Below are positions 10,108-31,913 of a stretch of 64,000 nt of DNA, in pieces. The notes under the pieces are model-generated. The model was not told the DNA's origin. It searched no databases and saw only the letters and a list, made by a program, of their open reading frames with translations. Made by a program: the position numbers and the translations under genes. Position 1 is the first letter of the stretch. Each line of letters begins with the position of its first letter. The stretch covers positions 16,244,001-16,308,000 of the forward strand of contig NC_047062.1 of assembly GCF_902459465.1 (NCBI RefSeq), written 5' to 3'. This stretch comes from Asterias rubens (Eukaryota).

Positions 10108-10377
10108 TAGTTGCGATAACGTAACCCTCCTGCCGACGCGTCGGCAGCAGGGTTACGTTCAGGGACTTTTCGTTTTCGACGACGGATGGTTCTGCGACGG
10201 TTGTTCAGCTAAACGTTGTCGTTTTTCAGCACAACGAAGATTCATCCCAAAAGTACTGTCGTAGAAATTGAGGGACGACCGTCCTCAAAGCCGACGCATG
10301 CGCAGATGACGCCAAATGTCATCTTTACTGTCGCAGAACCATCCGTCGTCAAAAACGAAAAGTCCCTATCGCAACTA
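10108..10377. mobile_element. 270-bp non-autonomous element with TAGTTGCGAT termini and a 9-bp TSD (MULE-like)
   Basis: Perfect TSD ctacgacac (10099-10107 and 10378-10386); internal palindrome of about 41 bp and inverted arms of about 38 bp. Confidence 0.8.
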
Positions 10378-24066: not shown

Positions 24067-25704
24067 AAAGAGAAAGCAAGCTTTATGTAGCAGTTTAGAA
24101 AAAGTCAAGACGTTTAAGAGTAATTTGTCAGCTCAGGATTATGATGGCGTTTGTGCAGTTAATATAAAAAGTGGTTTTGCATATTTTGGGAACTCCTCTT
24201 ACTAAATTGACCTGATTGATCAAGAGGTGTCTTAAAAGTAATTGTTAAGCAAAAAGAATCGTCTATTTTCTAACTGTAACACTTATGTGGTTTGGGTTTT
24301 TTATTTTTTTATTTTTTTATTCTCTTTTTCATTTAATGAACTTTTGTTCATTTGGATATGACAATGCAATTAACCACCATGTATGATTTAGTACTAAGTC
24401 AACAAAATAAGAATATTTTTTGTAAAGCACTTGCATGTGTGATGTACCCTCACATAACTGAATATGAATTAAAGTGTGCATACAACATTAATACACGTGA
24501 CAATTGCCCAAGGTATAACTTCTAGCCAAGTGTCTTTTTGTCTTTATCTTAAACAAGCCCCATTTCAGTGCCTTTCTGATGTAATTTACTGTTTCTTATC
24601 AAGATAATTTATCTGGCATTGGTGTGAAAACAAACATTGTATGCCTGTAAAGTGGAAAAATAAATCATAATTCAAGTGTATATATTCTCGATTAAATTGA
24701 ATTGTTAAAACATTGGATGTGTGAAGTCAGTCTTTTTTCTCATGTGTTGATTCCATGATTTGTGAATATGTATACAGACCTGTAGTGACCAGACAGCCTT
24801 TGCTTGGTAAATTGCCTTCCTGTGGTCTCTCCTACAAATAATTGGTGAAACATTTTCTGCCGAGTTTGAATTACACTGACTTCTTAATTAAAAATTCGGC
24901 ATTTTTATGTATTCCGACAGTACATTTCTGGGGCACGCTTACATGTGTCACTGTACGTTAGTCAACTTTTGTTTCCGTTTTATGATTTGCTGACGGTCCA
25001 TGTACATGTATAATGCATATTCGGATAGGATGGGGAACTTGGTTAAATAATTTTTCCTCCGTGGTTAAATAGTAGCAATTAAATAGAAGCAATGAACCCA
25101 TCCTAAATGCTGAAAATAATAAATAAAACACCCCGAAATTGTAAAAAAAATATATTTTATTATAATAAAACGTATGTTTATCGACAACTTAACTCGACGG
25201 TTTTTCCAGTTTGAATTCCATTGGGGTGCACGTGTCTTCGATCTACGCTCAAATCACACCACAAACGGATCTAACTATCATGCGTAGGCTAGTCCTAGCC
25301 TAAGACCATACCTACCTACCCGCAAATACTCAAAATCTAGTGCCAATAAACTCCAAGGAACTATTTTCCAAAGAGTAATTTTAACAATCACGAAAAATAA
25401 TGATCCAACAAGAAAGAATCAAAAGCCATGACCCTTTGGTTGCATCAGAGATCGATATGTGCGATATGTGTACATCTTTGAATTCTCACATTTGTGAAGG
25501 AAACATAATCAACACTTTAACTTATTCCAAATGTTATTTTTAAAAAACACTGGATCTCAACATTCGAATGGTGTCGCGGTGGCACCCTCGCACCATCTCG
25601 CACGTTGTAAAAAGTTTTAACAATGTTGCATTATAGTTAATAAAAACACAATTGGCGCGTTATACCTCTTCTCCAGCTGTGCGCAACACATGGTACAAAC
25701 TAAA

Positions 25705-28700
25705 ATGGCTGACGACGGTAAAATGGGATTCGAGGACAACTTCAATCCCTCACCAATCGTTAAAACACAAGCTGTCGTGACCTTAAAACCACCCATGCTG
25801 AACGAGAACACTGGCGAACAGTCTCAGAAGTACCTTGTTTCTTTGGGTAGGTAGTGAATTATAATTTATATATAATTCGTACTGCAGTTTAACTGCACGT
25901 CCACCACTACACTGTGACTGTGTAGTATATATGGCATGGTAGTTCACAACACATTTATAGCAGGCAGGCAGCCCGGCAGCTAGCAGCACAGCTAGCTCAA
26001 ATTAATGTTATGATAGAAATCGTTATGATGTAGCTGATTCGGATTACTCGTTTTGTGCCATAGAAACCTGAATCACTCTGACGGGGGTCTGTGTGTTGTG
26101 TACACAATTTTTACATGGCAAGGAATTTTCCACTTTATTTTTGTTGTCTAAAACTAAAACTTCAAAGTAAAATGCAGTGCAGTGAATGTACTAAGATGTG
26201 CAGTCTGATTACTTCTCTAGAAACTAGTAGAAGGCTCCCCGGTTCCTTACAAAGTTCCTTAAGTTATAGTTTCTAGAAGTACGGTCTGATTATGTGCACT
26301 GCAGTATAGAATGTAGTTGCGATAACGTAACCCTCCTCCCGACGGCCTTAGGCGTCGCCGTCGGATCGCAACTATATAGAATGTGGCAACCTTTACTTTT
26401 AAGAATTTATTTAATTGTTTTTGAACAACAATTAAATGATATCCAGGAAAAGGGGACCCGGGTGGAAGTAGAGTAGTGTTATGGCTGAAGTAAATTTTAT
26501 TGTGTATGGTTTCTAATCCTAGTCTAGTGTAATTCTATATCATTTTATTGGTATTCTTCAATAATTGCTCAGGCAGTGGTACTGTAGTATTCTATGACAT
26601 TGGTCCCTGTTCATTACCTACAGGCTACACTACATGCTTAAATGTAATTGTAATATTGGAGCAGTGTACATTTGTACACATTAAACTGTGTTGGCAGGAG
26701 AGCCGAAGCCACAGGACCAGTTTTTAAACAAAAATTTTGAGATTGCACACTTTTTCTTCCATACGCTGATCGCAGCTCTATGCAAACCACAGTCCCACGC
26801 CACTGTACTAATATGAAGGAGAAAAAAAATGAAAAATAGGTCAAGTTTCCCCTATTTGTATATGTACCTTGGGCCCTGATGTTGAAAACGGAAACTTTGA
26901 AAATATGCTCATCCAATGTGCTTTACACTACGCACTCCTTCAGTTTAGTTAACTGAAGATATCAGTATTTTTTTGTAAACAGAGACTGACACTCTAGAGT
27001 CTCTAGTCTACCATGTACCTGCATGGAGGTAGCATGGTACCAGCATGCTGCAGTCAGGGCTATACTTTGACCTCTGTGTTTTGTTTGTACGACCAAGGTT
27101 TGATACATGGTTTTACAACATGAGTAATAATTTGAAAGTACTTTTCTCTATGCTACACTTTTTGAAATACCATTGATTTGCCCAATCAATCATAATGATC
27201 AAGCAGCAGCGGCGCAAGACCTGTTAATCTGGGGGGGGGGGGGCAAACTTAAATTTAGAGGGGGCTGGCCAATAAAATCCTGGGGTGTTTGTCTTTGGGT
27301 TCAGGATCCTCATCGCTTGATTCAGAATCAGATCTGTGCCTATCATGGCATGGAGGTCGTTTGGATTTCTTGCAAAACTTTCTAATATCAATTTTAACTA
27401 ACTTTTGTATTCACTCAAGAAATAAGACTTTGCACTGTGTGCATGTGACGTGTTGTGCGAACTGCGTGTACAAGACTTCTTGCGGTTTTGGGCAGACAAT
27501 GCATTTCAATTTATAGCAAGTTCACAAGCTTGTACAGATAAATAAATCCACATTTTTATTAAAATTGCCGGAGATGGAAAGTGTATTGTTTTTTTTTTAT
27601 GGTGCCAGCTAATTATAATGGATGAAATTGAGTTTATTATTTCCAGCGCAAACAACATTGTAACAAATTGGGTGCAACTGCAGATTTATGAGAGAGAGTT
27701 ATTATTTCATTGTAATTTTTATATAGATTTTCAATTTGTTTTGATGCCCTACAGCAGCAGATTTCGGACAGTGGATTGTTTGATGTACTCAAACTTAAAA
27801 CCATAGAACCACCATGAAGGGAAATTATGAAGACTCGACTTTCCAAAGTCGATCCATTACGGATCTGTTTAAGCAGAAGGAACCAGTGAAGATGTGTGCC
27901 CCGATGGTGAGGTACTCCAAACTGGCTTTTAGAACACTGGTTAGGAGATATGATTGTGATTTGACTTTCACTCCGATGATCATGGCAGATAGCTTTGTCA
28001 AATCTACCAAGGCAAGAGACAATGAGTTTACAACAAACAGAGAGGACAGACCGCTGATTGTTCAGTTTGCAGCCAAACATGCGAGGGACTTGGCTGATGC
28101 AGCAGAGGTTGTCAGGCCTTATGCGGACGGAGTCGATCTGAATTGTGGTTGTCCGCAACGCTGGGCAACGTGTGATGGTTACGGTGCTCATCTCATTAAA
28201 CAGCCAGAGCTAGTCAGGGACATGGTGAGGCAGACCTGGGCAAGGACGGGCAGCGAAGACTTCACCACATCGATCAAGATAAGAATCCATCGAAATCTAC
28301 GCGACACCGTGGACTTATGTCAGAAGGCAGAGAGTGCAGGGGTCTCTTGGATTGCAGTTCATTGCCGAACCGTTCATGATCGAACCGAACCCGCAAACCA
28401 TGACGCCGTGAAACTCATCAAAGAGAGTGTTGGAATACCTGTGATTGCCAATGGAGATATAAAGAGCTTGACCGATGTTCATAGAGTTTGCGAGCAAACG
28501 GGTGTCGATGGTGTCATGGCTGCTAGGGGAATCCTAGAGAATCCAGCAATGTACGCTGGTCACACTGTAACACCAATCGATTGTGTGCAGCAATGGGTTG
28601 ATATATCGGTATCTCTGGGTACACAGTTCCAGTATTTCCATCATCATCTAATAAACATGATGGAGAAGGTGTTGACCAGAGCAGAACGGCGAGTCTTTAA

Positions 28701-30759
28701 TGTTATTACTAGCACTGCTGGTGTCATGGATTACCTTGAAGAGAACTATGGTATAAGATGCTCTTCGGAAACCCCAGGAACTGATAGTCTTTTGATAAAT
28801 GGAAAACTTACTGAATCATAATATATTAATAATGTTTCTGTTTGCATCATTTCCAAGATGTACCAATGCAGGCCTGGAATTTCATCTTTCATTTAACAAA
28901 GGGCTCTTCCGTTGGAAATATTTAAAATATCTATGGAAACCTTTGAAGGGGCACCAAGGCCACTACCAGGGGCAACATAGGACATTGCCTCTTCGGCCTC
29001 CATGTAACTCCATGCCTGCTTCAATGAACATCCAAATTTAATATGTCAATTTTACCAATACCAAAGAGAACCAATGGCCAAAAGAGGATGCAATTACATT
29101 TTTTGTTCTAACAGAAAACACAATTAATTTTAACCTCAGAATTTAACCCTAATACTAAAACTAAACCAAGAAAGAAACTGAGACTCCTCCTAATTGTAGT
29201 AATTAAAAATTTTAGTAATGTAATTTGATAAAATTTCACATGACATTTTTTGGAATTGGATAAGACAAGTCATCCTGATGACCTTTAAACAGTGCTCTGT
29301 GAACAGGGCCCAATTTCATAGAGCTGCTTTTAAGTACAAAAAGTTGCAAAGAACAACAAAATTATGCTTACCAGAATAAGGTTTACGATCTCTCATGTAC
29401 CGCCTATTATTGATATTCTGCTAGTTTTTGCTTAGCAGAAATGTTTTAAGTAATATTTTCTGCGTTAAAGCAAGGTATATTCTTTGTAATCAGAAAAGAC
29501 CAGTATCATCATTTTGGTGTATCCAAATATCATGTGTAAAAATACAGACCTGTGAGCATTTTGGCTCAATTGGTCTTTGGGGTTGCAAGAAGGTATTGAA
29601 AGGAAAAACACCATTGTTTGCATAGAAAGTTGTGTTTTCATACTTGAGAAAGGCTTTCAGATTATTGGGTGAAAAGTTACCACTTTCTCTAAAACTACAC
29701 TACTTCAAAGGGGTCGTTTCTAACAATGTTTTCAACAGCTATCCATTGCTCTTAACCAAAGTTAGTTGTGGTTATCAACTTGAGGAGCAATGACCAGAAG
29801 TATACCCCGCCTTTAAGCAGCTCTGTGATGTATGCTGCCACCTAGCGATCCGAAGTCGTAACATAAACAATATCAGCCGTATTTTGCATAGACAATAGTA
29901 TGGGCCAAAAACTAAGGAAATTAACCATAAAACAGGTACACTTTTTAGAGTTTTTAATGATTTATTTTGATTAATGTTTTTTTAACTGAGTAGGTATCAT
30001 GTTTGAGAAAAAACATTCGTCTGGATTGAAAAAAAAAGTGTTTTTCTTATATTAAAAAACTTGCAGCATTCTGGAATTGCTAACAAATTTAGTGGTATTT
30101 TAACTTGATATGTTTTATTGTCAAGAAATACAATCGTCTGAATTGAATAATAAAGAATAAAATAAAACTCAATGCTTTCGGAGTCCTTTTATCAATGTGT
30201 GTCGAAAGAACTCGATGGATAACTATGATTATTAAGTCAATAGTTTTAGCCAATTTTAATTATGTGAAACGTAATGTGTTGACTCGTAAATGGTTTACAA
30301 AATGTAAGAAAAGCAAATTTCTTAAAGCCGTTTTTGTATGTAGCGTCTTATTGAGAATCTCAGATACTGTCGGCCTCATTAAGATGAGTTTACAATTAAC
30401 TTTTTTTGAAGTAAAATTAATTTACTTTTTCATTTCTCATTGATGAAGAGGCGAAGCTTGACCGTCTGAAGCAAAAACCGGGAAAGCTGAACTCCAAAGA
30501 AATCCTCAAGTCTCTCCATCAAACCAAGGAAGATGCGATGAAGCGTTTCATCACCCAAGACGCTTCAGGGGTCGACGATGCGGACATTTCGGATACTTCA
30601 GATGTGACGACGATCAGTGACTTAAAGAGGAGGATGTTTCCAGAGCAACCTTTGACCTCTGAGGAGATTCAGTGTCTATTGGAGAGAGACTACTTAAGAC
30701 AAGAGGAAGAAACGGAAGACAAGATCTCAATGATCGGTACTGGTGGATCATTGACTTAA
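25705..30759 (+). CDS. CCDC32: Coiled-coil domain-containing protein 32 homologue, 2 exons (25705-25846, 30449-30759), about 150 aa
   Basis: The phase-1 junction gives SQKYLVSL-EAKLDRLKQKPGKLNSKEILKSLHQTKEDAMKRFI and later ISDLKRRMFPEQPLTSEEIQCLL, matching from memory human SEVYLASLEKKLRRIK..TSKDMLRTL..DRFL and LEHFKRWLQP..STEEVQYL. Start context aaaATGGC; an in-frame upstream ATG lies at 25690. Confidence 0.85.
26314..26374. mobile_element. 61-bp TAGTTGCGAT-family element with a perfect 9-bp TSD
   Basis: TSD tatagaatg at 26305-26313 and 26375-26383; shares acgtaaccctcct..ccgacg with the copy at 10108. Confidence 0.8.
27814..28821 (+). CDS. DUS4L: tRNA-dihydrouridine(20a/20b) synthase DUS4L, intronless CDS, 335 aa, nested in the CCDC32 intron
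   Basis: CAPMVRYSKLAFRTLVR, PLIVQFAA, catalytic NCGCPQRW, PVIANGDI and GVMAARG match human DUS4L; strong Kozak accaccATG; tandem CAG CAG CAG acceptor at 27752-27760. Confidence 0.97.
   Translation: MKGNYEDSTFQSRSITDLFKQKEPVKMCAPMVRYSKLAFRTLVRRYDCDLTFTPMIMADSFVKSTKARDNEFTTNREDRPLIVQFAAKHARDLADAAEVVRPYADGVDLNCGCPQRWATCDGYGAHLIKQPELVRDMVRQTWARTGSEDFTTSIKIRIHRNLRDTVDLCQKAESAGVSWIAVHCRTVHDRTEPANHDAVKLIKESVGIPVIANGDIKSLTDVHRVCEQTGVDGVMAARGILENPAMYAGHTVTPIDCVQQWVDISVSLGTQFQYFHHHLINMMEKVLTRAERRVFNVITSTAGVMDYLEENYGIRCSSETPGTDSLLINGKLTES
29835..29847 (-). promoter_or_regulatory. CTCF-like motif (CGCTAGGTGGCAG on the minus strand)
   Basis: Close match by eye to the CTCF core consensus; lies between the DUS4L 3' end and CCDC32 exon 2. 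Confidence 0.3.
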
Positions 30760-31913
30760 GAGTGAGCTCCAGCCCATTTTCATTCATAAGATCCCAATTC
30801 GGATAAATGTGCATCTTATGTTTATGCCCCGAACGGAGCATCATTTCCCCATGAGGATGTCATCATTCACCAATGCTGGTTTGTTTGGAAACGTTTTGCG
30901 TTGAGTGTAGGTATAGCAACGTCACAGAAAACTGTTATTATCGGGATTCTGCTGAGTGGAAGGAGGCAGAGATGCACTGTGTATCTATTAAAAGAAACTT
31001 CCTGTGAATTTTACCACGTATTTGGTGGCAGAGAGTCTCTGAGACGGGGGCAGATCACTGAAATTCACCGTAATTCTAATTAATTTGAAGTTGAATGTGT
31101 GTACTGAGAGCAAATTTTTGACTATAATATAACTACATGTACTTAATCTCTTCGTCCCCGGTGGGACATAGCCGTTGTGGTTACGTTATAATGTGTGTGT
31201 TTTGTGCGGGATGGAGTTGTAAGTATCAGATCCAACCAGAGAAATTGGTAAAGAACTTTAGTATGGCTGCTATCTAGAACCTGTCCGTCGACATGGTTGA
31301 ACCATACTGTCCTTTCATCTCTATAGTTGAACTTACCAGGAGCATAAGCCCCATCGGTATAAATTTTAGGAACATAAACACCATAATAGCTATTGTGAAA
31401 CTTGTCCAAGCAGATATCATAAACCCAGCACCCATAACATTCAAACTCTTCGCGGAAATCGTGATAATTGCACACAAGACTTGTTCGGCTATGTAGTTAT
31501 TGGTCCATCAGAACGGCTTTAGTTGGATCTTGATATTTTATGTTTAAATAATGGTTTTTAGTTTGTTGAACAATCCTTTTTAAATATTTAAATGTAACAC
31601 CTTTGTACTCGAACAAATTGCAACCGGAATTGTTTAGCCGTATCTTTTATTTATTTATTTATTACAACAGTTTATATACAAACAATAATTTATTTACAAA
31701 AGTATAATTTTTCACAAAACCATCAACATTTTAAAATCACACACTCAAAAAGCCTCATTCAACAAATTGCTATTGTAAACACAATGTTAGCTGTCAGTAA
31801 TAGCCGCCAAAATATACAATAAAATTGCCATGTTTTAAGCTGCAAAAAAAACATCATATGTTGCACATTTCACATCAAGTTTTACCATACATAAAAAACA
31901 TGTACCATTTGCA

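What the first reader, a model, noticed from the sequence alone, without database searches (positions are those of the whole stretch)
25690..30759. Intronless DUS4L sits on the same strand inside the only intron of CCDC32: candidate bicistronic locus with a shared first exon
Seen in sequence: CCDC32 exon 1 ends at 25846 and resumes at 30449, with a complete 335-aa DUS4L ORF in between. DUS4L is preceded by its own acceptor (CAG CAG CAG, 27752-27760) only 53-59 nt upstream of its ATG, and no obvious separate promoter or first exon was found. Established knowledge: same-strand nesting is much rarer than antisense nesting, and human DUS4L is multi-exon and unlinked to CCDC32. Inference: one promoter produces either an AP2-assembly/ciliary factor or a tRNA-modifying enzyme by choosing between alternative last exons. 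Splicing CCDC32 exon 1 to the DUS4L acceptor yields a 56-codon uORF that is in frame with DUS4L but stops at TGA 27781-27783, 30 nt before the ATG, so DUS4L would need reinitiation or leaky scanning. The intronless CDS suggests a retrocopy that captured the host promoter.
Basis: partly seen in the sequence, partly recalled or inferred. Interest (0 to 1): 0.75.

Follow-up and report, generated by a model that had tools for sequence, protein, structure and literature searches.

The report
Sea-star DUS4L retrogene shares CCDC32's first exon
In sea stars the only copy of the tRNA-modifying enzyme gene DUS4L is an intronless retrocopy inside the intron of the endocytosis gene CCDC32, and RNA data show that both are made from one shared first exon by a choice between two last exons, which is a clean and old example of a known way for retrogenes to get expressed.

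Summary
The window is Asterias rubens. ORF 27814-28821 is a DUS4L orthologue (Pfam Dus, E 5e-67). 25705-25846 and 30449-30759 are the two coding exons of CCDC32.

RNA contigs from four runs of four studies all carry both GT..AG joints, 25846>27755 and 25846>30449. Almost nothing is transcribed from the intron upstream of DUS4L. So one first exon feeds two alternative terminal exons.

Comparative genomics gives the origin. In four sea stars DUS4L has a single coding exon inside CCDC32, between a PPPI_inhib gene and a 264-265-aa gene. In urchin, sea cucumber, crinoid, brittle star and acorn worm it has many exons. It lies beside an LSM gene in urchin, crinoid and brittle star. Urchin and sea cucumber CCDC32 keep the same neighbours and the same intron, without DUS4L. 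This is an asteroid-specific "orphan" retrogene that hitchhikes on its host's promoter, and it is under strong purifying selection (dN/dS about 0.07).

One point is unusual. The shared exon is coding, so the DUS4L mRNA starts with a 56-codon upstream ORF. That ORF is the CCDC32 N-terminus with its AP-2-binding FxDxF motif, and it stops 30 nt before the DUS4L AUG. How DUS4L is translated is not shown.

Verdict: new member of a known kind, moderate interest.

The parts
25700..25846 (+). Shared first exon: short 5' UTR plus CCDC32 codons 1-47 and the first base of codon 48, counted from the conserved ATG at 25705. A second, Asterias-only in-frame ATG lies at 25690. It encodes the FxDxF-type motif FEDNF and the first half of helix AH1 (YLVSL). 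The donor GT is at 25847. The exact 5' end is not mapped.
   Evidence: RNA contigs begin at about 25700-25713 and end at 25846 (X1 record 1, plus bin arithmetic for X8 and X9). The start MADD is conserved in Acanthaster and Patiria. Protein alignment.
25847..27754 (+). Intron removed in the DUS4L isoform (1908 nt, GT..AG). It is the 5' part of the CCDC32 intron.
   Evidence: Joint 25845/6>27754/5 in X1, X2, X8 and X9. Depth is 0-5 apart from a short dispersed repeat at about 26316-26346.
27755..27813 (+). Leader of the DUS4L terminal exon. It holds 9 codons that extend the CCDC32 exon-1 frame, the stop TGA at 27781-27783, and a 7-codon mini-ORF (ATG 27783 to TAG 27804-27806). The DUS4L ATG follows at 27814.
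   Evidence: The acceptor, the T-rich tract and the in-frame TGA within 'TTGTTTGAT' are conserved in four sea stars.
27814..28821 (+). DUS4L coding sequence: 335 aa in a single exon, a tRNA-dihydrouridine(20a/20b) synthase orthologue.
   Evidence: Pfam Dus E 5e-67. It is 60-76% identical to animal proteins named tRNA-dihydrouridine(20a/20b) synthase-like. dN/dS is 0.06-0.08.
28822..30063 (+). DUS4L 3' UTR, about 1.1-1.3 kb, containing a dispersed repeat at about 29300-29470. The 3' end falls somewhere between about 29950 and 30100. ATTAAA at 30051 is the last hexamer inside the covered stretch. The poly(A) site is not mapped.
   Evidence: One contig runs 27754-29328. Further contigs at similar depth reach 29912-30063. 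Depth is about 0-5 in 30128-30324. Hexamers; repeat copies.
25847..30448 (+). The single, phase-1 CCDC32 intron (4602 nt, GT..AG) that hosts the DUS4L terminal exon.
   Evidence: Joint 25845/6>30448/9 in all four runs. An intron at the homologous position, without DUS4L, is present in S. purpuratus and Holothuria CCDC32.
30449..30759 (+). CCDC32 exon 2 coding part: the rest of AH1, AH2, the 'RRMFPEQPL' block and the ExxxLL dileucine motif. The stop is at 30757-30759.
   Evidence: Pfam CCDC32 E 6.7e-12. Alignment with orthologues.
30760..31300 (+). CCDC32 3' UTR. It continues beyond 31300, by roughly 540 nt more judging from contig length.
   Evidence: X1 record 8 (1419 nt) and X8 record 23 (1522 nt) run from 30448 past 31300.

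Best explanation
In the stem lineage of sea stars, after the split from brittle stars and before the split of forcipulatids from valvatids, a processed DUS4L mRNA was reverse-transcribed into the single phase-1 intron of CCDC32 in the sense orientation. The multi-exon parent beside an LSM gene appears to have been lost, because no second DUS4L was found.

The retrocopy has no detectable promoter of its own. A polypyrimidine tract and CAG acceptor 59 nt upstream of its ATG capture CCDC32 exon 1, and the copy brings its own 3' end. The locus is therefore one transcription unit with one promoter, one first exon and two alternative terminal exons.

- E1>27755 gives the DUS4L mRNA.
- E1>30449 skips the whole retrogene and gives the CCDC32 mRNA.

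Both forms are present at comparable depth. The DUS4L share of the two junctions is about 21-54% across the four runs.

Because E1 is coding, the DUS4L mRNA opens with the CCDC32 AUG in a strong AAAaugG context. The resulting 56-codon uORF stops 30 nt before the DUS4L AUG. DUS4L must then be made by reinitiation after this uORF (my preferred guess), by leaky scanning, or from a minority of transcripts that start downstream of the CCDC32 AUG.

Shown: the anatomy, both junctions, the lack of intronic transcription upstream of the acceptor, the phylogenetic distribution and purifying selection. Inferred: retroposition as the mechanism, loss of the parent, the absence of any minor own promoter, and the mode of translation.
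For: RNA evidence:
- In X1, X2, X8 and X9 (four studies) contigs join the last 23-50 nt of exon 1 to 27755 and to 30449, both GT..AG.
- The DUS4L contig (X8 record 19, 1598 nt, depth 191) runs without a break from 29 nt of exon 1 through the CDS to 29328. That is the k=31 graph signature of one exon shared by two downstream partners.
- Bin arithmetic shows no contig over 27595-27753 in X1, X2 or X8.

Identity.

Retroposition:
- The CDS has one exon in A. rubens, A. amurensis, Acanthaster and Patiria. It lies between PPPI_inhib(+) and a 264/265-aa gene(-), with CCDC32 exons 1 and 2 on either side.
- It is split into at least 4-7 separate coding pieces in S. purpuratus, Holothuria, Antedon, Ptychodera and Amphiura.
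- It lies next to LSM(-) in urchin, crinoid and brittle star.
- CCDC32 of urchin and Holothuria has the same neighbours and an intron at the same place, with no DUS4L in it.
- Only one DUS4L-like protein per sea-star species appears among the best 120 hits.

Function and conservation:
- dN/dS is 0.06-0.08.
- The acceptor and the in-frame stop are conserved in four species.

Precedent: retrocopies in host introns expressed as chimeras with upstream host exons, for example Taf9 in Ak6, and orphan retrogenes (PMC4772013; PMC5408686).
Against: - The RNA evidence is de Bruijn contigs, not reads. Only 23-50 nt of exon 1 are phased with each junction, so it is not shown that DUS4L mRNAs carry the whole of exon 1 including the CCDC32 AUG, nor where they start.
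- X9 has low intronic coverage near 27647 (about 5-11 against 17.7 in the exon), so a weak intronic start cannot be excluded.
- No poly(A) remnant or target-site duplication was found. That is expected after more than 200 My, but it means retroposition rests on intron loss plus relocation.
- The ancestral LSM-side locus of sea stars was not inspected, so loss of the parent is not directly shown.
- Reinitiation after a 56-codon uORF with a 30-nt spacer, with a further uAUG in between, is expected to be inefficient (PMC5972666).
- In Acanthaster no canonical poly(A) hexamer lies between the DUS4L stop and CCDC32 exon 2, so the 'own 3' end' part may not hold in every species.
- Splicing was tested only in Asterias rubens.
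Confidence: 0.8

Rival explanations
1. DUS4L protein comes mainly from a minor, independent promoter inside the CCDC32 intron or from a start site late in exon 1. The abundant exon-1/DUS4L chimeras would then be poorly translated by-products of the host's transcription.
For: The chimeric leader carries 4-7 upstream AUGs in every sea star, the first in a strong context. Reinitiation after long uORFs with short spacers is inefficient (PMC5972666). X9 shows some intronic coverage near 27647. Contigs cannot phase the 5' end.
Against: No contig covers the 160 nt upstream of the acceptor in three of four runs. In all four runs the DUS4L contig continues into exon 1. Upstream of the acceptor there is no sequence conservation among sea stars beyond the T-rich tract, whereas the acceptor itself is conserved.
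Confidence: 0.1
2. DUS4L reached the CCDC32 intron by a DNA-level rearrangement and lost its introns afterwards, rather than by retroposition.
For: No poly(A) remnant or target-site duplication flanks the insert.
Against: All of the several introns seen in five outgroups are absent at once in all four sea stars, and none of the ancestral neighbours (LSM) moved with the gene. The insert is CDS plus short UTRs only.
Confidence: 0.06
3. The exon-1/DUS4L junction is an assembly artefact of short contigs, or comes from a processed DNA copy, and is not a real mRNA.
For: Only 23-29 nt of exon 1 are attached to the DUS4L contigs. Many spurious repeat-driven joints occur in the same table. The tool did not report whether the joined form also stands in DNA runs (table 5b).
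Against: The joint is identical in four runs of four studies. It falls exactly at a canonical GT..AG pair and a conserved acceptor, has no inserted letters, and lies in unique sequence. The 29-nt limit is what k=31 graphs impose at a shared exon. The sister joint to 30449 behaves the same way, with 50 nt in X2.
Confidence: 0.02

Closest known systems
Retrocopies that 'hitchhike' on a host gene's promoter and 5' exons, e.g. mouse Taf9 in Ak6 (Carelli et al. 2016, PMC4772013; review PMC5408686)
   Same: An intronless retrocopy sits in sense orientation in an intron near the 5' end of a host gene. It is expressed as a chimeric transcript with the host's upstream exon(s), and the host gene stays functional.
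   Different: Here the shared exon is coding. It holds the host's start codon and 47 codons, including a functional motif, so the retrogene sits behind a long uORF. The case is in echinoderms, is conserved across a whole class, and concerns the only copy of the gene.
Orphan retrogenes (Ciomborowska et al. 2013, cited in PMC4772013 and PMC5408686)
   Same: The retrocopy replaced its multi-exon parent and carries the ancestral housekeeping function under purifying selection.
   Different: Nine of ten orphan retrogenes in Carelli et al. gained CpG-island promoters. This one apparently relies on the host's promoter and on splicing. Loss of the parent was not directly inspected here.
Alternative last exons / intronic polyadenylation at nested retrogenes (H13/Mcts2, Herc3/Nap1l5; PMC3467052, PMC13309782 seen; described in PMC5408686)
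   Same: A retrogene in an intron determines whether host transcripts end early or read through to the distal exons.
   Different: In those loci the retrogene has its own (imprinted) promoter and the truncated host transcript is a side effect. Here the 'truncated host transcript' is itself the retrogene's mRNA.
Cellular bicistronic or long-uORF mRNAs translated by reinitiation or leaky scanning (review PMC5972666)
   Same: The downstream ORF is preceded by a translated-looking upstream ORF that ends shortly before it. In A. amurensis the stop overlaps an in-frame AUG as UGAUG.
   Different: No translation data exist for this locus. The uORF is a fragment of another gene's protein, not a dedicated regulatory uORF. 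The UGAUG overlap is not conserved in frame among sea stars.
DUS4L (tRNA-dihydrouridine(20a/20b) synthase) and CCDC32 (AP-2 assembly/endocytic factor; bioRxiv 10.1101/2025.08.05.668722, PMC12768407)
   Same: Both products are ordinary orthologues by sequence. The CCDC32 motif order FxDxF - AH1 - AH2 - dileucine is kept.
   Different: In the outgroups examined, DUS4L lies on a different contig from CCDC32 (urchin, sea cucumber, acorn worm) or beside an LSM gene. Their physical and transcriptional coupling is confined to the sea stars among the species examined. Sea-star CCDC32 lacks the upstream Trp of the mammalian 'extended' FxDxF.

Membership tests
DUS4L (tRNA-dihydrouridine synthase 4-like) | Dus (FMN-dependent TIM-barrel) domain over most of the protein | tested here: met
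   PF01207 E 5.1e-67, residues 28-286. Nearest solved relatives are DUS2/Dus catalytic domains, E 6e-26.
DUS4L (tRNA-dihydrouridine synthase 4-like) | Orthology to DUS4L rather than to DUS1L, DUS2 or DUS3L | tested here: met
   The best 120 hits that carry a name are nearly all 'tRNA-dihydrouridine(20a/20b) synthase-like' or DUS4L, at 58-76% identity over about 90% of the query. No tree was built.
DUS4L (tRNA-dihydrouridine synthase 4-like) | Catalytic Cys motif (NCGCP) and FMN-site Lys (S/xIKIR) retained; enzyme activity on U20a/U20b | tested here: inconclusive
   The motifs DLNCGCP and SIKIRIH are present on direct reading of the ORF. Asterias has HCRT where others have HGRT. Activity cannot be tested here.
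CCDC32 | Pfam CCDC32 domain | tested here: met
   PF14989 E 6.7e-12 on exon 2, profile positions 68-149 of 150. Exon 1 alone gives no hit.
CCDC32 | Motif order described for mouse CCDC32: FxDxF, AH1 (YLxSLExKL), AH2, dileucine ExxxL[LI] | tested here: met
   FEDNF, YLVSL|EAKLDRLK, SKEILKSLHQTKED and EIQCLL align with orthologues from acorn worm, crinoid, urchin, sea cucumber and amphioxus. Motif definitions are from bioRxiv 10.1101/2025.08.05.668722.
Retrogene (processed gene copy) | Lacks all introns of the orthologous or parental gene | tested here: met
   One HSP covers the whole CDS in four sea stars. Five outgroups give 4-7 separate coding pieces each, and some short exons were missed by tblastn.
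Retrogene (processed gene copy) | New genomic location, away from the ancestral neighbours | tested here: met
   The ancestral DUS4L-LSM adjacency is seen in urchin, crinoid and brittle star. The sea-star copy lies inside CCDC32 between PPPI_inhib and a 264/265-aa gene. Those are the neighbours CCDC32 also has in urchin, and the upstream one in Holothuria.
Retrogene (processed gene copy) | Poly(A) tract remnant and target-site duplications | tested here: not met
   No direct repeats of 25 nt or more in 25847-30448 and no A-tract at a consistent place. This is expected to be eroded at this age, so it weakens the inference without contradicting it.
Orphan retrogene | Parental copy absent from the same genome | tested here: inconclusive
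   Only one DUS4L-like protein per sea-star species appears among the best 120 hits.
Host-promoter hitchhiking / chimeric transcript | Spliced junction between a host 5' exon and the retrocopy in RNA | tested here: met
   Joint 25846>27755, GT..AG, in 4 of 4 runs.
Host-promoter hitchhiking / chimeric transcript | No promoter of its own | tested here: inconclusive
   No contig covers 27595-27753 in X1, X2 or X8, and intron depth is 0-5. Contigs drop rare forms and no 5'-end data were available.
Alternative last exons | Two terminal exons, each with its own cleavage/poly(A) site | tested here: inconclusive
   Depth falls to about 0-5 in 30128-30324, between the DUS4L 3' UTR and the acceptor at 30449. 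ATTAAA lies at 30051. No poly(A)-tailed reads were seen. Acanthaster has no hexamer in the interval.
Bicistronic mRNA | Two ORFs on one mRNA, both translated | not testable with these tools
   A uORF of 56 codons and DUS4L are on the predicted chimeric mRNA. No ribosome-profiling or proteomic data were available.

The most novel reading that the evidence does not exclude
The DUS4L mRNA is truly bifunctional. Its 56-codon uORF would be translated into a stable mini-CCDC32 that keeps the AP-2 alpha-appendage-binding FxDxF motif but lacks AH1/AH2 and the dileucine motif. It could therefore compete with full-length CCDC32 or other FxDxF proteins. DUS4L would be made by regulated reinitiation 30 nt downstream. 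The splice choice at this locus would then couple AP-2/endocytic tuning with tRNA dihydrouridylation in sea stars. The evidence does not exclude this. The in-frame stop just after the junction is conserved in four species, and the FxDxF motif is conserved in Asterias and Acanthaster. The Patiria assembly, however, shows a frameshift between the start codon and the motif, and the rest of exon 1 evolves fast.
Probability: 0.08. Interest if true: 0.8.

Novelty: new member of a known kind. Interest (0 to 1): 0.5.

Why it matters
This is a well-resolved natural example of how a retrocopy without a promoter can take over an essential housekeeping role. It does so by capturing its host's first exon, and the arrangement has apparently been stable since the origin of crown sea stars.

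It has three practical uses:
- It explains why sea-star DUS4L is intronless.
- It explains why no full-length sea-star CCDC32 protein turned up in the large protein collections searched, so gene models for CCDC32 and the 5' end of DUS4L in asteroid genomes probably need correcting.
- It offers a tractable system for two open mechanistic questions, because sea-star oocytes and embryos can be injected. The first is how splice-site and poly(A)-site competition partitions one promoter's output between two unrelated proteins. The second is how a main ORF is translated behind a long uORF in strong context with a 30-nt spacer.

It does not reveal a new kind of genetic system.

Tried and rejected
- The word-indexed protein search with CCDC32 exon 2 found only the window's own 73-aa ORF pieces. 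The exhaustive HMMER search was needed to reach orthologues.
- The look-up of Amphiura DUS4L isoform X2 failed because only the longest product is on record. It was solved through the cluster member X1.
- No direct or inverted repeats that could be target-site duplications were found in the intron.
- The many odd joints around 26336-26346, 28887-28972 and 29303-29426 are repeat-driven. The 29300-29470 element has several other copies in the window. I rejected them as splicing.
- No Rfam family or tRNA lies in 25000-31500, so the high-depth spots are not small-RNA genes.
- I considered an in-frame CCDC32-DUS4L fusion protein. It is excluded by in-frame stops in all four sea stars, whichever of the three tandem CAG acceptors is used.
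- I considered the N-terminal extensions of outgroup DUS4L models (Diadema 381 aa, Branchiostoma 377 aa) as possible CCDC32 exon-1 fusions. They show no similarity to CCDC32 N-termini.
- Our-findings look-ups gave nothing relevant.
- No paper links DUS4L and CCDC32 apart from one unrelated gene list.


Full report
**What is in the sequence**

The region reads as the first-stage reader described.
- On the + strand an ORF opens at ATG 25690, with a second in-frame ATG at 25705, and runs to a GTAGGT donor after 25846.
- A complete 335-codon ORF occupies 27814-28821.
- After an AG at 30447-30448 the first frame resumes at 30449 and ends with the stop at 30757-30759.
- The middle ORF is a dihydrouridine synthase (Pfam Dus, E 5.1e-67). 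The last piece is CCDC32 (Pfam PF14989, E 6.7e-12).
- The best database relatives of the middle ORF are animal proteins named tRNA-dihydrouridine(20a/20b) synthase-like (DUS4L). Identity is 76% and 75% to Acanthaster and Patiria, and 58-69% to other echinoderms, hemichordates, amphioxus, molluscs, cnidarians and vertebrates.
- The exact protein is encoded on a chromosome of assembly GCA_902459465.3. I recognise this from memory as the Asterias rubens assembly. The cluster mate from Asterias amurensis is consistent with that.

**RNA evidence**

I laid the contigs of four public runs of the same species, from four different studies, on 25400-31300.
- All four runs carry two canonical GT..AG joints from the same donor: 25846>27755 and 25846>30449.
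- The contig that holds the DUS4L coding sequence (in X8: 1598 nt, depth 191, covering 27754-29328) continues for 29 nt into exon 1.
- The CCDC32 exon-2 contig does the same, with 29 nt of exon 1, and 50 nt in X2.
- Twenty-nine to thirty letters is what a k=31 assembly graph allows before two paths that share an exon merge. This is the expected signature of one first exon with two downstream partners.
- The acceptor used is the first of the three tandem CAGs (intron ends at AG 27753-27754).
- Working back from the bin depths, no contig covers 27595-27753 in X1, X2 or X8.
- The rest of the intron is at depth 0-5, apart from a short dispersed repeat at about 26316-26346. X9 has a low background of about 5 throughout the intron, rising to about 11 near 27647.
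- There is thus no sign of a separate DUS4L first exon or a start site just upstream of the acceptor.
- Downstream of the DUS4L stop, coverage continues at similar depth to about 29.9-30.06 kb and then drops to about 0-5 in 30128-30324, before the acceptor at 30449.
- The DUS4L exon therefore behaves as a terminal exon with a 3' UTR of about 1.1-1.3 kb. The poly(A) site itself is not mapped. ATTAAA at 30051 is a candidate.
- Junction depths give DUS4L a share of 21%, 32%, 54% and 42% of the two isoforms in X1, X2, X8 and X9. Contig depth is a crude measure.

**Origin**

Evidence from sea stars:
- In A. rubens, A. amurensis, Acanthaster planci and Patiria miniata the DUS4L coding sequence is one uninterrupted exon.
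- In all four it lies between a PPPI_inhib-domain gene on the + strand and a 264/265-aa gene on the - strand.
- tblastn finds CCDC32 exon 1 upstream and exon 2 downstream of it in all four.

Evidence from outgroups:
- In the urchin S. purpuratus, the sea cucumber Holothuria leucospilota, the crinoid Antedon, the brittle star Amphiura and the acorn worm Ptychodera the gene is split into many exons over 2.3-16 kb.
- In urchin, crinoid and brittle star its downstream neighbour is an LSM gene on the opposite strand. That is therefore the ancestral echinoderm position.
- CCDC32 of the urchin and the sea cucumber follows the same PPPI_inhib neighbour as in sea stars. In the urchin it is also followed by the 269-aa minus-strand gene.
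- In both it has an intron at the same place (after '...YLxSL', phase 1), and there is no DUS4L in the locus.

The simplest history is retroposition of a DUS4L mRNA into the pre-existing CCDC32 intron. This happened after asteroids split from ophiuroids and before forcipulatids split from valvatids. From general knowledge that is on the order of 200 million years ago or more.

Only one DUS4L-like protein per sea-star species appears among the best hits. The copy evolves under strong purifying selection, with dN/dS 0.07 between the two Asterias species and 0.06-0.08 among genera. It is therefore most likely an orphan retrogene that replaced its parent.

No poly(A) remnant or target-site duplication survives. 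I could not inspect the LSM-side locus of sea stars, so loss of the parent is inferred.

**How the retrogene is expressed**

The sequence just upstream of the DUS4L start is the only conserved non-coding block in that part of the intron. It consists of a T-rich tract, a CAG acceptor, and a short leader containing 'TGG(A/C)TTGTTTGAT'. Further upstream nothing aligns between Asterias and the valvatids.

Exon 1, its start codon context (AAAATGG), its last codons and its donor are also conserved.

This fits the 'hitchhike' route described for mammalian retrocopies. A copy that lands in an intron near the 5' end of a host gene is expressed as a chimeric transcript with the host's upstream exons. 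An example is Taf9 in Ak6 (Carelli et al. 2016, PMC4772013; review PMC5408686).

**What is unusual**

The captured exon is coding.
- From the conserved ATG 25705 it encodes 47 residues of CCDC32.
- Aligned with orthologues, these include the FxDxF-type motif (FEDNF in Asterias, FQDDF in Acanthaster) and the first half of helix AH1 (YLVSL).
- Exon 2 encodes the rest of AH1, AH2 and the dileucine motif.
- In mouse CCDC32 the FxDxF motif binds the AP-2 alpha appendage. AH1, AH2 and the dileucine motif bind the alpha/sigma2 core (bioRxiv 10.1101/2025.08.05.668722).

When spliced to 27755 the exon-1 frame runs on for nine codons and stops at TGA 27781-27783, 30 nt before the DUS4L AUG. This gives a 56-codon uORF, or 61 codons from ATG 25690.
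- The homologous TGA is in frame in all four sea stars. Patiria has an additional earlier stop. No species can make a fusion protein.
- The leader holds 4-7 upstream AUGs in every species, the first in a strong context.
- In A. rubens a further AUG overlaps the uORF stop (UGAUG) and opens a 7-codon ORF.
- In A. amurensis a 1-nt deletion puts that AUG in frame with DUS4L, which is why its database model is 345 aa.

Reinitiation is known to fall with uORF length and with short spacers (PMC5972666). DUS4L is therefore probably translated inefficiently, by reinitiation, by leaky scanning, or from a subset of transcripts that start downstream of the CCDC32 AUG.

The exon-1 contigs begin at about 25700-25713. 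This suggests a very short 5' UTR, but contigs cannot place the cap site. This step is inference and is the main open question.

**Comparison with what is known, and novelty**

Every element has precedent: nested sense retrocopies, host-exon capture, orphan retrogenes, and retrogene-dependent alternative termination of host transcripts (H13/Mcts2, Herc3/Nap1l5).

I found no paper that connects DUS4L with CCDC32. No full-length sea-star CCDC32 protein is in the protein collections searched, which suggests that current annotations miss it.

I therefore class the finding as a new member of a known kind. It has three distinguishing features:
- a coding shared exon that creates a long uORF;
- sole-copy status of a housekeeping enzyme;
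- conservation across a whole echinoderm class.

**Limits**

- Splicing was tested only in A. rubens and only with assembled contigs.
- Start sites, poly(A) sites and translation were not measurable.
- In Acanthaster no poly(A) hexamer lies between DUS4L and CCDC32 exon 2, so the 3'-end arrangement may differ there.
- In the Patiria assembly exon 1 has a 1-nt frame shift between the start codon and the FxDxF motif. This may be an assembly error or a real change.

Noticed in passing
L005:9011-9174 (Patiria miniata CCDC32 exon 1): In the Patiria assembly the conserved start MADD... is out of frame by one base with the downstream FHDDFNP...YLASL part. The ATG-initiated ORF stops after 18 codons. 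This is either an assembly indel or a real change, in which case CCDC32 would start at an internal Met without the FxDxF motif.
   Followed up: partly
L011:9990-10035 (Asterias amurensis), homologous to window 27781-27816: A 1-nt deletion relative to A. rubens puts the AUG that overlaps the uORF stop (TGATG) in frame with DUS4L. The database model is therefore 345 aa, not 335. In A. rubens the same AUG opens only a 7-codon ORF ending at TAG 27804-27806.
   Followed up: yes
window 25705-25846 and 30449-30756 versus L011: All 8 coding differences in CCDC32 between A. rubens and A. amurensis are non-synonymous and none is synonymous. DUS4L next to it has 19 nucleotide differences, of which 4 change the amino acid. 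Flanking non-coding DNA is about 88-95% identical. The numbers are small, but this is an odd pattern for a conserved gene.
   Followed up: partly
window 25690-30759; L004, L005, L011: No full-length sea-star CCDC32 protein is present in either large protein collection; only 73-aa ORF fragments and one read-through model turned up. The gene tables of four sea-star assemblies list only DUS4L between PPPI_inhib and the 264/265-aa gene. CCDC32 seems unannotated or merged in asteroid genomes. One caveat: the table keeps only the longest product per gene.
   Followed up: partly
window 29300-29470 and 26316-26346: Dispersed repeats reach contig depth in the thousands and produce many spurious joints. 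The 29300-29470 element, inside the DUS4L 3' UTR, has other copies at about 4.2, 5.2-5.7, 8.7, 15.5, 21.0-21.3 and 57.1 kb of the window. The 26316-26346 element has a copy at 10108-10138.
   Followed up: partly
window 29457-29488: A 32-nt stretch of the DUS4L 3' UTR is missing in contigs of X1, X8 and X9. It is an indel polymorphism, not splicing (ends TT..TA). Several SNPs and small indels are shared among runs, for example 27972 T>G in all four.
   Followed up: no
L004:11024-11691 (Acanthaster): There is no AATAAA or ATTAAA, nor any of ten common variant hexamers, in the 668 nt between the DUS4L stop and CCDC32 exon 2. A 60-nt perfect-looking inverted repeat lies around 11385-11510. DUS4L transcripts may end differently there, or run through exon 2.
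   Followed up: no
one search hit list (P0051, P0053, P0064, P0069, P0072, P0085, P0088-P0090, P0101): Many fish and shark 'DUS4L' models of 534-577 aa combine Bap31 domains (PF05529, PF18035) with Dus. These are DUS4L-BCAP29-type conjoined models. In vertebrates DUS4L is thus often modelled as fused with a neighbour too.
   Followed up: no
window 28363-28374: Both Asterias DUS4L proteins read HCRT where all other animal orthologues inspected read HGRT.
   Followed up: no
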